In this document: positions 9,255 through 13,514 of the stretch, one piece after another
How the letters are laid out: the number at the start of each line of letters is the position of its first letter
Position numbering within the stretch: position 1 is the stretch's first letter
Assembly: GCF_033153115.1 (NCBI RefSeq)
Contig: NW_026889806.1
Location: 4,464,001-4,528,000 of the forward strand
Direction: 5' to 3'
Length of the DNA stretch: 64,000 bases
DNA from: Saccostrea echinata
Lineage: Eukaryota
The notes under the pieces: generated by a model
Databases searched by the model: none
Seen by the model: the letters and a program-made list of their open reading frames with translations, nothing else
What the model was told of the DNA's origin: nothing
Made by a program: the position numbers and the translations under genes

Positions 9255-12200
9255 CTAACTCTCCTTGGCCACCAGGACACCTCCTGTTTTCACATCTTTG
9301 CTGGATTTCTCCATGTCTTTGGATTCCTCTCCTTTTATCTTTAGATTATACTTTGTTCTGTATTTGTTGATCTCACTTCCCTTAGTTTCTAGTTGTTTTG
9401 ATAATGATTCTACAAGTTTACCCATCTGTAAAAAACAGTTTGAGAATAATTTATTATCTTGAGTTTTCCTTCATGTATATATTGTATAAGGAATTTACAA
9501 AATTTACAAAAAGCTTAGGGGAAAAATACCATTAATATCAAATCAATTACTCTTAGTTTTACTAAATTCAGTCATCAAAAATTTCTTTTAATGAATCTGT
9601 CACTTTAAAAAAATTAAAATAATTCATTCCGAAGTGAATTCTAAACTAAATACAGAATCAGTTATTGTAAATTTCAAAGCACTAAAGTTTCTAAATCAAT
9701 GTTTTGTTAAGCAGCAAGTTGTTTACTTAACACAAAAGTTTATTACCTGTTCCTTATTGTTCACTAATGCCGGAAGAACATCTTTGACTGTCCTCTCAAC
9801 TAAAACACCCCCCACCATTCTAAAGCACTTCCTATCTGGGGCAACATCTTTCAGTGTCTCTATAACCAGTCTAAAAATAAGCATTAAGAGATTATGTTTA
9901 TTGTCTGTCATATCAAGTTACAAGAAATAATAAAGATAGCAATAGGTTTTGATAATTAATTTTGATAGGTATTATAATCTGTTTTGACAAACATGACTGG
10001 TGTTCAGTAATTAAGACATGTGCTTGCCCCAACGGCCACAACATGAAACATATTATAATAAATCTGAGTAAACAAATTGTAGTTTCAATTCATTTCAGAT
10101 TAAAGGTAAATGCAACATAAAATTAAAACTTATTAAAGGAAAAAAATGCATTATAAGCATATAACAGTAGCCCTTCTTACAAAATATCTTACGATTAATT
10201 TTCATGGAAAGAGGAATCTTACAGTTTTATTCTTTTTTATAAAAATTCTTATGAAAATCTCATGTGTAAAATTTGCCATAACTTTACAAGAGCTCTAACC
10301 CTCTCGTTAATTTTGAATCCTATTTTAATTTTAAAATATAACATTTAATAAATACAAGGTTAATAGAACTTTTTAATGCATCCTACAATACTCTTTTATA
10401 ATAATTTCACAAATTAAATGAAATATACCTCAAAATATTTATGATGACCATTCCCCTTATCTGTTATGAATGCATTCGTGAAAAGCACTTAAGATTTGGC
10501 GTAAGTGACTCTTAGTTAAAATCTTTAAAAAAAAAAAACAAACAAAAAAAAAAAACAAACAAAAAAACAACTTTAAGATTTTTTTGTGAAAAGGGCTACA
10601 AATCTTCTGAATATCTTATGGTATTTAAGCACATATCTCTAAAAGTCCCTGTGCTTCATACATGTAGTAGGAAAGGAGAAATGCATGAAGAAAACATATG
10701 GCTGGACCAGGAATTGAACCTGGGACCCCTGTATTACTAGTCAGGTTCTCTAACCACTGAGCTATCCAGGCCGATATCCACCGTCTGTACCTGAACTTCT
10801 ACATTCCTCCTAATCTGAGATTCCTCTGACTCTAACCCCTATTTTGACATGTGCAGGGGACCTGCACATGTCACAATATAAAAGCAGGGGTTAGAGTCGA
10901 AGGAATCTCGGATTACATTCCTCCCTCCTTAAACAGTCTTCGATCTCAAAGACACAAGTTCTAGGGCCCTGCCAGGAATTACTAATTTACACATAACGTA
11001 ACCTGAACATGGCCCCCCACACTGGCCACCAAATGTACCGTATATACTCGCCTATAAATCGGTTTTTTGGGAGTTAACTTTTAGTCCAAAACTCTATGTC
11101 TGACTTATAGGCGAGTCATCAAAAGCTTGGTATTTTTCTAGACGACGAAATGTACCGGTAGTATTTTTAACATAACTTCGACGATTATCGTTGAGAAATG
11201 TCTGGACGTATTATATTATTTATGTATTCTAAGATTATATATAAAGTACAAGTATTTACATGTTTGAATGATTTTATTTTGATCTTAAGTGTATATTATT
11301 TATTTGATTAATTATAAACAAAAATATTTCTCTAATTAACTTGTGACTTACTGTAAATCTATCGTTTGTCAGTAAAATTGAATTGCGAACCCGATATACC
11401 GGTAATACGTTCAGCATTAATGTATAATTATATGTACTGTCTGCAATGTTTTTGACAACAGAAATAATATTCTTAAAAATAATTCAGAATATTATTCTGG
11501 GGCTAATAAAACTCGATTGTTTATGAATGAATATTGAATGAATGAATGAATATTCCAATGTTTAGTACACGATTTTCTTGGGGCGCGTGCCACTAAATAA
11601 ATACGGTGTCAGGTAAGGGATACAGGTAATTAAGAGACAGTAATTGCTAATAAAGGATCAAACATAGCGTTATTAAAAACTATAGATATGGCTTGGACAT
11701 TGAGCACCTCCTAATTAAAAATCATCAAAATGCCGAGCGCATGGCGAAGGAACAGTTGCTACCTATATTTTTATCGACTTAGGTCTGTTGCGGCCGAGAT
11801 TCGAACTCACGACCTCCCGATCACAAAGCGAGCGCTCTACCGACTGAGCTACCGTGAACGGTAAATTTATAGGAGAAGACAAAAGAGAGAGAAAATATCG
11901 GCGTAATTTCTCAAAATATTATTTGAAACACATGTTAAAACATTAGAGCATTGATTTGAAATTGTCCACCAATCCTGGCAAAAAGTTGTACCGACTTATA
12001 GGCAGGTCAATGGCAAATACCTCCATAATAACCTCAAAATTCACAACCGACTTATAGGCGGACCGACTTATAGGCGAGTATATACGGTAGTAGGAAAGGA
12101 GAAATGCATGAAGAAAACACATGGCCATAGGAAAGGGGGGGGGCATGCCCCCCAATAATTTTGCCGATATATAGATTACTATAGTAAACATAGGTACTAT

Positions 12201-13514
12201 CTATATGCTTGTGCCCCCTCAATAAAAACGCCTGATGACCTTCTTTTTTTTTTTTTTGCTTGTCAGAAAATTTTTGGTAGTGCCCCCTCATCTATCAACT
12301 GAAAAATGTTTGGCTGTGCCCCCCAAACTGAAATTGCTTCCTACGGGCCTGAAACATATGGCTGGACTGGGAATCGAACCCGGGACCCCTGCATTACTAG
12401 TCAGGTGCTCTAACCACTAAGCTTTCCAGGCCGATTATATCCACGGTCCTAGTGAGAACCCTGCCGATATCCACGGTCCGTAAAGCCCGAACTTCTACAT
12501 ACAGTAAGAATTAAAATAGCTTAGTTACCGCTTAATGCCTTTGAAAACAGGGATCAGATTTAATATTAATAAAAAGAAAACTTTCTAAGATTAATAAAGT
12601 ATGCTTTATATACAGTTTGCTCTTGTTAAGTATTCTGTTTAAAAAAAACTTTAATTTTGATTGCATTAATCAAGTTCCATTGCAATTACAAAGTATTGCT
12701 ATTCAGTGCATGCCAAAACAAGGTTGTATGTTCGTTCGCCCTAAAACTTGTTCGCCCTTGACGCCGTTCGCCCTCATTCCCGTTCGCCCAGAGTCCGATC
12801 GCCCTAAAACTTGTTCGCACAGGGTCCGTTCGTCTTATTTATATTGCAGAAAGTTGAATAATGAACCAATGGATTTTTTAAATAAATTGTATGTACATTG
12901 GTACATAAATTGCACACGGGAGACAACAGACGTATGCATGTGGTCACACTATAAATACCTGTCCTATCAAAGACCCGGCAGACCAACAGAAATTAACGTC
13001 TCAGTCCTTTAATTGTTTTCAAAACTTACAGTGACATAATTAAGTATAATTAAATCAATTAAGCATGTAAAGAGCATAAATATCAAATTTGAAGATTACG
13101 GTAAATAAAAAAAAATTCTGTAGTAACATTTGGAAAAAAAAAAACACCAAGTCGTAAAATATTGAATAAAATTAATAATAAATGTTGATATTTATTATTT
13201 ACTGTATATATAATAGGGCGAACGAGATATAGGGCGAACAAGAATAATGGCGAACGGACCTTGCGCGAACGGACTCGTGCGAACAGGTAGATAGGGCGAA
13301 CGAACCCGATACCCCAAAACAACGTGGTTTCCAAATACATGTATCAAAACCTCAAATATAGCCATTGTTGGAAAAGTTGTTAAAATATTTACTCGTGTTC
13401 TTTCATGTCCATTTCTAATTCCGATATTTTTGTTGCTATTGCCCTCTGCTGCTGTCTTAATTCCTGAAAACCAGCAACGATTTGTTCTTTCGACTTGTTA
13501 ATGTTAGTCGCCAT
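9255..13514 (-). CDS. PFDN2: Prefoldin subunit 2; exons 13393-13514, 9747-9870, 9255-9425 (138 aa)
   Basis: Spliced protein MATNINKSKEQIVAGFQELRQQQRAIATKISELEMDMKEHE|LVIETLKDVAPDRKCFRMVGGVLVERTVKDVLPALVNNKEQ|MGKLVESLSKQLETKGSEINKYRTKYNLKIKGE...GGVLVAKES*. All introns are GT-AG with matching phases. RKCFRMVGGVLVERTV is the typical prefoldin-2 motif. Confidence 0.96.
10699..10771 (-). ncRNA. tRNA-like sequence (A and B boxes, AGT in anticodon position) within TRIM LTR; not a functional tRNA gene
   Basis: GCCTGGATAGCTCAGTGGTTAGAGAACCTGACTAGTAATACAGGGGTCCCAGGTTCAATTCCTGGTCCAGCCA forms an imperfect cloverleaf with a bulged anticodon stem. Confidence 0.7.
10811..10915. mobile_element. 105-bp palindromic MITE with 9-bp TSD
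   Basis: TAATCTGAGATTCC...GGAATCTCGGATTA fold-back. TSD CATTCCTCC at 10802-10810 and 10916-10924. Confidence 0.8.
11038..12087. mobile_element. Non-autonomous Tc1/mariner (pogo-like) element, TA TSD
   Basis: TIR CCGTATATACTCGCCTATAA / TTATAGGCGAGTATATACGG, subterminal GACTTATAGGC repeats, TA on both flanks. Confidence 0.85.
11725..11863 (-). mobile_element. 5' part of tRNA-derived SINE nested in the mariner-type element
   Basis: Near-identical to 33170-33300. Minus strand GGTAGCTCAGTCGGTAGAGCG..GTGAGTTCGAATCTCG shows A and B boxes. Confidence 0.75.
12120..12351. mobile_element. Short MITE inserted in TRIM LTR
   Basis: Imperfect TIR CATGGCCATAGGAA / TTCCTACGGGCCTG. AAACA is duplicated relative to the uninterrupted LTR copy. 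Confidence 0.6.
12359..12431 (-). ncRNA. Second tRNA-like copy within the other TRIM LTR
   Basis: GCCTGGAAAGCTTAGTGGTTAGAGCACCTGACTAGTAATGCAGGGGTCCCGGGTTCGATTCCCAGTCCAGCCA with an intact B box GGTTCGATTCC. Confidence 0.7.
12722..13313. mobile_element. MULE-like MITE with 9-bp TSD and GTTCGCCC subterminal repeats
   Basis: GG..GTTCGTTCGCCC / GGGCGAACGAAC..CC termini. TSD CCAAAACAA at 12713-12721 and 13314-13322. Confidence 0.8.

What the first reader, a model, noticed from the sequence alone, without database searches (positions are those of the whole stretch)
10659..12503. Hidden miniature LTR retroelement whose LTRs are built around a tRNA-like Pol III promoter
Seen in sequence: removing three nested insertions (10811-10915, 11038-12087, 12120-12351) leaves a ~430-bp minus-strand element. 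It has two ~140-bp LTRs with TGTAG..CTACA inverted ends. TGGTGGCCAGTGTGGGGG lies 2 nt after the first LTR, a pure purine tract AAGGAGGGAGGAA abuts the second LTR, there is no ORF, and TACA is duplicated on both flanks. About half of each LTR is a tRNA-like cloverleaf with A and B boxes, in the same sense as the PBS and PPT. Established: the PBS resembles the complement of a tRNA-Ile(AAT) 3' end; TRIMs are mobilised in trans; plant Cassandra TRIMs carry 5S sequence in their LTRs. As I recall, tRNA-bearing TRIMs with 4-bp TSDs in animals have been named Helenus, so the class may be known even if this family is not. Inference: this is a SINE/LTR hybrid transcribed by Pol III from an LTR-internal promoter and reverse-transcribed by a Gypsy partner. 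The partner is probably not the Gypsy in this window, which has a Leu PBS and a 5-bp TSD. Standard annotation would call this two SINEs or pseudo-tRNAs.
Basis: partly seen in the sequence, partly recalled or inferred. Interest (0 to 1): 0.85.

Follow-up and report, generated by a model that had tools for sequence, protein, structure and literature searches.

The report
Known tRNA-bearing mini LTR retrotransposon (Helenus)

Summary
Window 10659-12503 (minus strand) is a ~434-bp terminal-repeat retrotransposon in miniature (TRIM). It has two TGTAG..CTACA LTRs, an 18-nt PBS two bases after the 5' LTR, a PPT abutting the 3' LTR, no ORF and a TACA duplication. Three other dispersed repeats interrupt it. 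Both LTRs hold a tRNA-Thr(AGT)-like cloverleaf (Rfam tRNA 46.6 and 42.9 bits). The PBS exactly complements this genome's tRNA-Ile(AAT) 3' end.

The genome holds full copies, tandem arrays and solo LTRs. Fourteen of the 18 elements with both termini present have perfect 4-bp TSDs.

It is not new. Kojima 2024 (PMC10886601) defined Helenus/TRIMp3, and six exact words from this copy occur only in Helenus-5_SaGl in that paper's data. Copies are old (LTR pairs 85-96.5% identical), and no partner Gypsy was found.

Two small additions: the sense-strand T4 right after each tRNA module is nearly the only T4 run, and RNA-library contigs cover the family from about tRNA +1 onward. Both are suggestive only.

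First readers of this scan noted similar elements at eight or more other places in this genome.

The parts
10659..10662 (.). Target-site duplication TACA (copy next to the 3' LTR)
   Evidence: Identical to 12500-12503. Family copies have 4-bp TSDs.
10663..10803 (-). 3' LTR, 141 bp, intact, with TGTAG..CTACA termini
   Evidence: 84-92% identical to the other full-length genomic LTRs scored. By eye ~94% identical to the published Helenus-5_SaGl LTR; most differences are CpG-decay transitions.
10699..10771 (-). tRNA-Thr(AGT)-like cloverleaf with A box (TAGCTCAGTGG) and B box (GGTTCAATTCC). It has one extra base in the anticodon arm.
   Evidence: ARAGORN (4-base 'anticodon' agta). Rfam tRNA 46.6 bits against a gathering score of 29.
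10691..10694 (-). T4 run (sense strand) 4 nt after the tRNA module. It is a candidate Pol III terminator and end of R.
   Evidence: Present at the same place in nearly all natural full copies, and almost the only T>=4 run in them.
10804..10810 (-). 3' half of the polypurine tract (GGAGGAA) abutting the 3' LTR
   Evidence: The family PPT is AAGGAGGGAGGAA.
10811..10915 (.). Nested 105-bp hairpin MITE with 40-nt inverted arms. It is not part of the TRIM. Its 9-bp TSD is 10802-10810 / 10916-10924.
   Evidence: I1; every scored match but two covers at least query 1-101, and there are 225 first-look candidates.
10925..11033 (-). Internal region, from the TT spacer and PBS to the 5' half of the PPT (10925-10930)
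   Evidence: 40 scored matches and 67 first-look candidates. By eye ~95% identical to Helenus-5_SaGl-I.
11014..11031 (-). Primer-binding site TGGTGGCCAGTGTGGGGG, 18 nt, 2 nt after the 5' LTR
   Evidence: It is the exact complement of the 3' end plus CCA of this genome's tRNA-Ile(AAT) genes. It is conserved in the family.
11034..11037 (-). Last 4 nt of the 5' LTR (..TACA), cut off from the rest by the 1050-bp insertion
   Evidence: compared with the intact LTR.
11038..12087 (.). Nested 1050-bp element with 28-nt terminal inverted repeats and a TA TSD (11036-37 / 12088-89). It is not part of the TRIM.
   Evidence: I2; 3918 first-look candidates; other copies match query 1-695 and 826-1050.
12090..12119 (-). 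5' LTR, putative U5 part, including T4 at 12114-12117
   Evidence: (D4) and 23: 97% identical to the 3' LTR.
12120..12351 (.). Nested 232-bp dispersed repeat with a 5-bp TSD AAACA (12115-19 / 12352-56). It is not part of the TRIM.
   Evidence: other copies match query 6-240 or a shorter part of it (from 21-36 to 237-240), and there are 2979 first-look candidates.
12357..12499 (-). 5' LTR, putative U3 plus tRNA module (12359-12431). It contains a ~30-nt internal duplication around 12432-12480.
   Evidence: (D1, D8, D9). Rfam tRNA 42.9 bits.
12500..12503 (.). Target-site duplication TACA (copy next to the 5' LTR)

Best explanation
The locus is one old, inactivated insertion of the published TRIM family Helenus-5_SaGl (class Helenus / TRIMp3), or its counterpart in a very close relative of Saccostrea glomerata.

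Shown here:
- The layout is LTR, TT spacer, 18-nt tRNA-Ile(AAT) PBS, ~100-nt non-coding internal part, PPT, LTR, flanked by a 4-bp TSD.
- Each LTR carries a tRNA-Thr(AGT)-derived pseudo-tRNA with intact A and B boxes, in the sense orientation.
- After integration the copy was hit by three unrelated transposons.

Inferred mechanism:
- Pol III is recruited by the A/B boxes and starts at about tRNA +1 in the 5' LTR (LTR position ~35).
- It must read through the weak T4 that follows the module, then continue through U5, PBS, internal part, PPT and the 3' LTR's U3.
- It stops at the T4 of the 3' LTR. This gives an RNA of ~350 nt with an R of ~80 nt at both ends.
- Host tRNA-Ile primes minus-strand synthesis.
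- Reverse transcriptase and an integrase that makes 4-bp staggered cuts are supplied in trans by a Gypsy element with the same PBS.

That helper was not found in this assembly, and the family looks extinct here.
For: Structure.

Family behaviour, as expected of LTR retrotransposition:
- full copies of 399-424 bp;
- tandem LTR-INT-LTR-INT-LTR arrays;
- solo LTRs;
- 14 of the 18 elements with both termini present have perfect 4-bp TSDs.

tRNA module: it passes Rfam's tRNA gathering score in both LTRs. ARAGORN types it as a cloverleaf with an 8-nt anticodon loop in most copies and as tRNA-Thr(AGT) in one.

PBS: it equals the 3' end of tRNA-Ile(AAT) genes in the same genome.

Published identity:
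- The PBS word and six further 17-27-nt words from this copy each occur exactly once in the paper's data, always in Helenus-5_SaGl.
- The paper gives LTR 144, internal 118, total 406, TSD 4 and a tRNA-Ile PBS for that family.

Pol III logic: in 12 natural full copies the T4 after each tRNA module is, with few exceptions, the only sense-strand T>=4 run.

RNA: metatranscriptomic RNA-Seq contigs (X11, X12) cover the element from about tRNA +1 of the 5' LTR through the internal part and the 3' LTR U3. Summed depths are very high, and the 5' U3 and flanks have almost none.
Against: - No transcript start, end or strand was shown. The runs are contigs only, the RNA libraries come under a different organism code from the run that holds this locus's flanks, and contigs holding U3 would be placed on the 3' LTR anyway.
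- A T4 only ~80 nt after the start should stop most Pol III transcripts inside the 5' LTR.
- No autonomous partner was found. Exact PBS sites number only 18 genome-wide; 16 are Helenus copies and 2 could not be fetched.
- LTR pairs are 85-96.5% identical, so no sampled copy is young.
Confidence: 0.9

Rival explanations
1. It is an ordinary Pol II-driven TRIM (a 'TRIMp2'). The tRNA-derived segment is a passenger left by an old SINE or tRNA insertion into the LTR, and transcription starts elsewhere in the LTR.
For: Pol III use by Helenus has never been validated experimentally. The T4 right after the module would stop Pol III early. The tRNA module is not a functional tRNA in most copies.
Against: The A and B boxes and the T4 are kept across different bivalve Helenus families whose other LTR parts differ (sequences shown). 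T4 runs are nearly absent from the rest of the element. The U3 upstream of the module is only ~35 nt, which leaves little room for a Pol II promoter. RNA-library contig coverage drops about 10,000-fold at roughly tRNA +1 in the 5' LTR.
Confidence: 0.2
2. These are two independent tRNA-derived SINEs or tRNA pseudogenes that happen to flank a short spacer, which is what standard annotation would call them.
For: tRNA finders report two isolated tRNA-like hits.
Against: The repeats extend well beyond the tRNA part on both sides and have TG..CA ends. A PBS and a PPT sit exactly at the inner LTR borders. The same unit recurs at 32 places, with a perfect 4-bp TSD at most of them and no simple-repeat or poly(A) tail.
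Confidence: 0.01
3. The element spreads working tRNA-Thr genes, so it would be an LTR-borne expansion of tRNA genes serving translation.
For: One copy (L010) is typed as tRNA-Thr(AGT). The paper says seven bivalve families could encode tRNA-Thr.
Against: In the window and in most copies the anticodon arm has an extra base, which gives an 8-nt loop. Acceptor-stem pair 2-71 is mismatched. The paper judges a functional tRNA unlikely.
Confidence: 0.03

Closest known systems
Helenus-5_SaGl (Saccostrea glomerata), Kojima 2024, Biology 13:119, Data S1 / Table S1 / Fig S2C
   Same: It has the same LTR sequence, including the TGTAG..CTACTACA ends, the tRNA module and the T4. It has the same internal sequence, the same tRNA-Ile(AAT) PBS after TT, the same PPT, a 4-bp TSD and a size of about 406 bp.
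   Different: The window copy differs from the consensus by about 5-6%, mostly CpG-decay transitions and small indels (by eye). It has a ~30-nt duplication in the 5' LTR and three nested transposons.
Other bivalve Helenus families (such as Helenus-2_SaGl and Helenus-4_CVi)
   Same: They share a closely related tRNA module, the T4 after it, the 3' end of the internal part with its PPT, and 4-bp TSDs.
   Different: They use other PBS types (His, Lys, Pro and others) and have different U3/U5 and internal sequences.
[quoted passage not shown]
   Same: It is a TRIM with a Pol III internal promoter and terminator in each LTR. Transcription starts in the small-RNA part of the 5' LTR and ends in that of the 3' LTR.
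   Different: Its promoter is of the 5S type, not the tRNA type. It occurs in plants, has 5-bp TSDs, and its reported R is only 18 bp, against about 80 nt inferred here.
tRNA-derived SINEs (SINE2)
   Same: They have a tRNA-derived head with A and B boxes, are short, and are non-autonomous.
   Different: SINEs have no LTRs, PBS or PPT. They end in a LINE-like or simple-repeat tail and are copied by target-primed reverse transcription.
biv-TRIM (Sci Rep 2019, PMC6934838)
   Same: It is a TRIM found in bivalves.
   Different: It has no canonical PBS, and that paper does not mention Pol III (0 hits for 'polymerase III'); its tRNA mentions concern only the inner domain. It is an unrelated family.

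Membership tests
Helenus (TRIMp3), Kojima 2024 | TRIM: short, non-coding, with two direct LTRs around a short internal part | tested here: met
   The LTRs are 141 and ~177 bp and the internal part is 116 bp. There is no ORF. Natural full copies are 399-424 bp.
Helenus (TRIMp3), Kojima 2024 | tRNA-derived sequence with A and B boxes inside each LTR | tested here: met
   Rfam tRNA scores are 46.6 and 42.9 bits against a gathering score of 29. ARAGORN finds cloverleaves.
Helenus (TRIMp3), Kojima 2024 | PBS complementary to a tRNA just after the 5' LTR, and a PPT just before the 3' LTR | tested here: met
   The 18-nt PBS exactly complements the 3' end of tRNA-Ile(AAT) genes of the same genome. The PPT is conserved in the family.
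Helenus (TRIMp3), Kojima 2024 | 4-bp TSD (animal Helenus) | tested here: met
   The window has TACA/TACA. 14 of the 18 elements with both termini present have perfect 4-bp TSDs.
Helenus (TRIMp3), Kojima 2024 | Transcription by RNA polymerase III from the LTR-internal promoter | tested here: inconclusive
   The T4 pattern and RNA-library contig coverage starting at about tRNA +1 fit this. Contigs cannot show a start, a strand or the polymerase. The paper has not validated it either.
Helenus-5_SaGl family | Sequence identity to the published consensus (LTR and internal part) | tested here: met
   The PBS word and six further words of 17-27 nt from the window copy each occur once in Data S1, only in Helenus-5_SaGl. 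A by-eye alignment gives about 94-95% identity.
Helenus-5_SaGl family | Host is Saccostrea glomerata | not testable with these tools
   The genome and the sequencing runs are unnamed or coded.
Trans-mobilisation by a Gypsy element with the same PBS | An autonomous Gypsy with a tRNA-Ile PBS and 4-bp TSD in the same genome | tested here: inconclusive
   The window's Gypsy has a Leu-type PBS and a 5-bp TSD. Of the 18 exact PBS sites in the genome, 16 are Helenus copies and 2 could not be fetched. Weaker internal-part hits have no adjacent ORF of 150 aa or more in two loci and only one of 223 aa in the third.

The most novel reading that the evidence does not exclude
Public total-RNA (metatranscriptomic) libraries may already hold abundant Helenus RNA that begins at tRNA +1 of the 5' LTR and runs through to the 3' LTR. 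The conserved T4 after the module would then define an R of about 80 nt. That would be the first transcript-level support for Pol III-driven LTR retrotransposition (TRIMp3) in an animal, and it would imply regulated read-through of a Pol III terminator, analogous to retroviral poly(A)-site bypass.
Probability: 0.3. Interest if true: 0.45.

Novelty: already known. Interest (0 to 1): 0.2.

Why it matters
It matters mainly for annotation. Such elements are miscalled as tRNA genes, pseudo-tRNAs or SINEs, and this locus shows how nested insertions can hide one. The class, the family, its tRNA-Ile primer, its 4-bp TSD and the Gypsy-helper idea are all in Kojima 2024. What remains open in the literature is whether Pol III really makes the template RNA. 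The T4 placement and the RNA-library coverage seen here give a cheap way to test that with raw reads.

Tried and rejected
- My first primer-tRNA pattern had the wrong T-arm spacing and found nothing. The corrected pattern found 13 sites; the tRNA at all five loci scanned is tRNA-Ile(AAT).
- Partner hunt. Weaker internal-part hits (L073-L075) have no ORF of 150 aa or more next to them, apart from one 223-aa ORF in L074.
- A PBS pattern that excludes the Helenus LTR end gave 0 hits.
- The plain PBS gave 18 sites, and 16 of them are Helenus copies.
- Species identification failed, because the run and organism names are coded.
- Read laying gave contigs only, so it shows no transcript starts, ends or strand.
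- I did not build an insertion-free version or a family consensus. Natural pieces and natural full copies were used by reference instead.
I used exact-word look-ups and a by-eye alignment instead.
- Sub-threshold Rfam hits on the 105-bp MITE (MIR5284, mir-616) and on the antisense of the tRNA module (Plastid-ycf2) are far below their gathering scores and are rejected.
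Full report
**1. Observation**

- The 3' LTR is 10663-10803 (141 bp, TGTAG..CTACTACA).
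- The 5' LTR is split into 11034-11037, 12090-12119 and 12357-12499.
- TACA flanks both ends (10659-62 and 12500-03).
- After the 5' LTR come a TT spacer and then TGGTGGCCAGTGTGGGGG (11014-11031).
- AAGGAGGGAGGAA abuts the 3' LTR once the 105-bp hairpin element and one copy of its target duplication are set aside.
- The element totals about 434 bp and has no ORF.

| Insertion | Target duplication | Coordinates |
|---|---|---|
| 105-bp MITE | cattcctcc | 10802-10 / 10916-24 |
| 1050-bp element | TA | 11036-37 / 12088-89 |
| 232-bp repeat | AAACA | 12115-19 / 12352-56 |

All three inserts are independent dispersed families whose copies end at these breakpoints. First-look candidates number 225, 3918 and 2979 respectively.

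**2. The tRNA part**

ARAGORN finds a 73-nt cloverleaf at 10699-10771. Rfam's tRNA model scores 46.6 bits there and 42.9 bits at 12359-12431, against a gathering score of 29. Both lie on the minus strand, the same sense as the PBS and PPT.

The A box (TAGCTCAGTGG) and B box (GGTTCAATTCC; GGTTCGATTCC in the other LTR) are intact. The anticodon loop reads CTAGTAA, which is Thr AGT, but an extra base bulges the anticodon stem and acceptor pair 2-71 is mismatched. Across 20 loci most copies are typed the same way, and one is typed as tRNA-Thr(AGT). The module is a Thr-derived pseudo-tRNA, not a working tRNA gene.

**3. Family behaviour in the same genome**

I searched natural pieces by reference, not a rebuilt element, and analysed 32 distinct places. 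They include:

- full LTR-INT-LTR copies of 399-424 bp;
- tandem LTR-INT-LTR-INT-LTR arrays;
- solo LTRs.

Fourteen of the 18 elements with both termini present, the window's copy included, have perfect 4-bp duplications. Examples are cctt, aaat, gagt, catc, ccac, cttg, attg, taac, aata and catt. The PBS and PPT are conserved at the inner LTR borders, and no copy ends in a simple-repeat tail.

LTR pairs within copies are 85.4-96.5% identical, so the sampled family is old. The internal part has only 67 first-look candidates.

**4. Primer**

tRNA-Ile(AAT) genes of this genome end in ..GGTTCGACCCCCACACTGGCCA (13 sites at up to one mismatch; the tRNA at each of the five loci scanned is tRNA-Ile(AAT)). 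With CCA added, the last 18 nt are the exact complement of the PBS.

**5. What is known**

Kojima 2024 (PMC10886601) defines Helenus as TRIMs with a tRNA-derived sequence in the LTRs, a PBS and a PPT. Animal members have 4-bp TSDs, and the paper lists 51 families in pteriomorph bivalves.

Its Data S1 contains Helenus-5_SaGl from Saccostrea glomerata. The PBS word and six further 17-27-nt words taken from the window copy each occur exactly once in the supplement, always in that family. Table S1 gives LTR 144, internal 118, total 406 and TSD 4. Fig S2C assigns tRNA-Ile-AAT and aligns the PBS with a C. gigas Gypsy.

By eye the window's LTR and internal part differ from the consensus by about 5-6%, mostly CG>TG/CA changes and small indels. 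The family is therefore already described.

No later paper in the library validates Pol III use. biv-TRIM is unrelated.

**6. Mechanism**

Shown here: the structure, the matching primer tRNA, the TSD length, and family dispersal of the kind made by LTR retrotransposition.

Inferred: Pol III transcription and Gypsy help. Two observations bear on Pol III.

- **(a) T4 pattern.** In 12 natural full copies the sense-strand T4 that follows each tRNA module (element positions ~112 and ~372) is, with few exceptions, the only T>=4 run, at 30% T. The other bivalve families shown also have a T4 just after the module and none in their internal parts. This fits U3 ~35 nt, R ~80 nt (tRNA +1 to T4) and U5 ~29 nt. 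It requires read-through of the 5' T4. The paper discusses terminators only for Cassandra.
- **(b) RNA-library contigs.** Contigs of two metatranscriptomic RNA-Seq runs were laid on a natural full copy, L002:1300-2100 (element 1903..1501, minus strand). They give summed depths of 4x10^4 to 4x10^5 from 1489 to 1866, then 2.3 in 1867-1893, and 0 in the flanks apart from an unrelated repeat covered near 2002-2100. The covered span starts at about tRNA +1 (1869) of the 5' LTR and runs through U5, PBS, internal part, PPT and the 3' LTR's U3. Some contigs bridge internal-PPT-U3-tRNA.

This second point is suggestive only:
  - Contigs cannot show starts, strand or level.
  - U3-bearing contigs would be placed on the 3' LTR in any case.
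  - Other Helenus families contribute, as the loose ends show.
  - The RNA runs carry a different organism code from the run that holds the flanks.

**7. Partner**

The window's Gypsy has ~985-bp LTRs at 99% identity (35845-36823 and 41731-42709). Its PBS is TGGTGTCAGAAGTGGG, which from my own knowledge is Leu-type, and its TSD is the 5-bp GTAAC.

Exact tRNA-Ile PBS sites number 18 in the genome. Sixteen are Helenus copies and two could not be fetched. No helper was identified, which fits an extinct family.

**8. Verdict**

What I add is small: corrected insertion boundaries, the T4/R inference, and a lead from RNA libraries.

I deliberately built no insertion-free version and no consensus of this animal retroelement, because natural copies sufficed. 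First readers of this scan noted the same kind of element at eight or more other places in this genome; I did not test those notes.

Noticed in passing
window 11786-11858 (inside the 1050-bp nested element): A second, unrelated tRNA-like cloverleaf, typed Thr(TGT) by ARAGORN (Rfam tRNA 35.3 bits). It sits in the only part of the 1050-bp element (query 696-825) that other genomic copies do not match; those copies have about 236 bp there instead of 130 bp. It may be a nested SINE or a variable cargo.
   Followed up: partly
window 10811-10915: A 105-bp perfect-hairpin MITE with 40-nt arms and a 9-bp TSD, with at least 225 first-look candidates genome-wide. It gives sub-threshold hits to MITE-derived plant miRNA families (MIR5284, 55 bits against a gathering score of 93).
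   Followed up: partly
window 12120-12351: A 232-bp dispersed repeat with about 2979 first-look candidates. It has imperfect inverted ends (GGCC.TAGGAA), three GTGCCCCC motifs, an internal T-run and a 5-bp TSD AAACA. Its class was not determined.
   Followed up: partly
window 12432-12480: The 5' LTR carries a ~30-nt internal duplication of the GCCGAT..ATCCACGGTCC segment just upstream of the tRNA module. The 3' LTR lacks it.
   Followed up: no
window 35840-42714: A young Gypsy element with ~985-bp LTRs at 99% identity, TGTCAC..GTGACA ends, a Leu-type PBS (TGGTGTCAGAAGTGGG) and a 5-bp TSD (GTAAC).
   Followed up: partly
L008 (C30:2348899-2352040) vs L009 (C27:2022122-2025263); L019 (C19) vs L037 (C46): Pairs of loci on different contigs have the same solo LTR or complex array with identical flanks. 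They are likely uncollapsed haplotigs or recent segmental duplicates in this 923-Mb, 425-contig assembly.
   Followed up: no
L063 (G000:C54:50058044-50061065): A tandemly repeated tRNA gene unit, Gln(CTG)-Asp(GTC)-Arg(ACG)-Ile(AAT), with a period of about 1.25 kb. It lies in a larger cluster, with Ile hits from C54:50049747 to 50073038. This is the source of the primer tRNA.
   Followed up: partly
L005 and L017 (C34:4871245-, C9:31590671-): A sub-variant of the family has LTRs that end ..CCTAA instead of ..CCTACTACA (a 4-nt deletion). It still has matching 4-bp TSDs (gtta, aaaa), and both cases are in tandem arrays.
   Followed up: no
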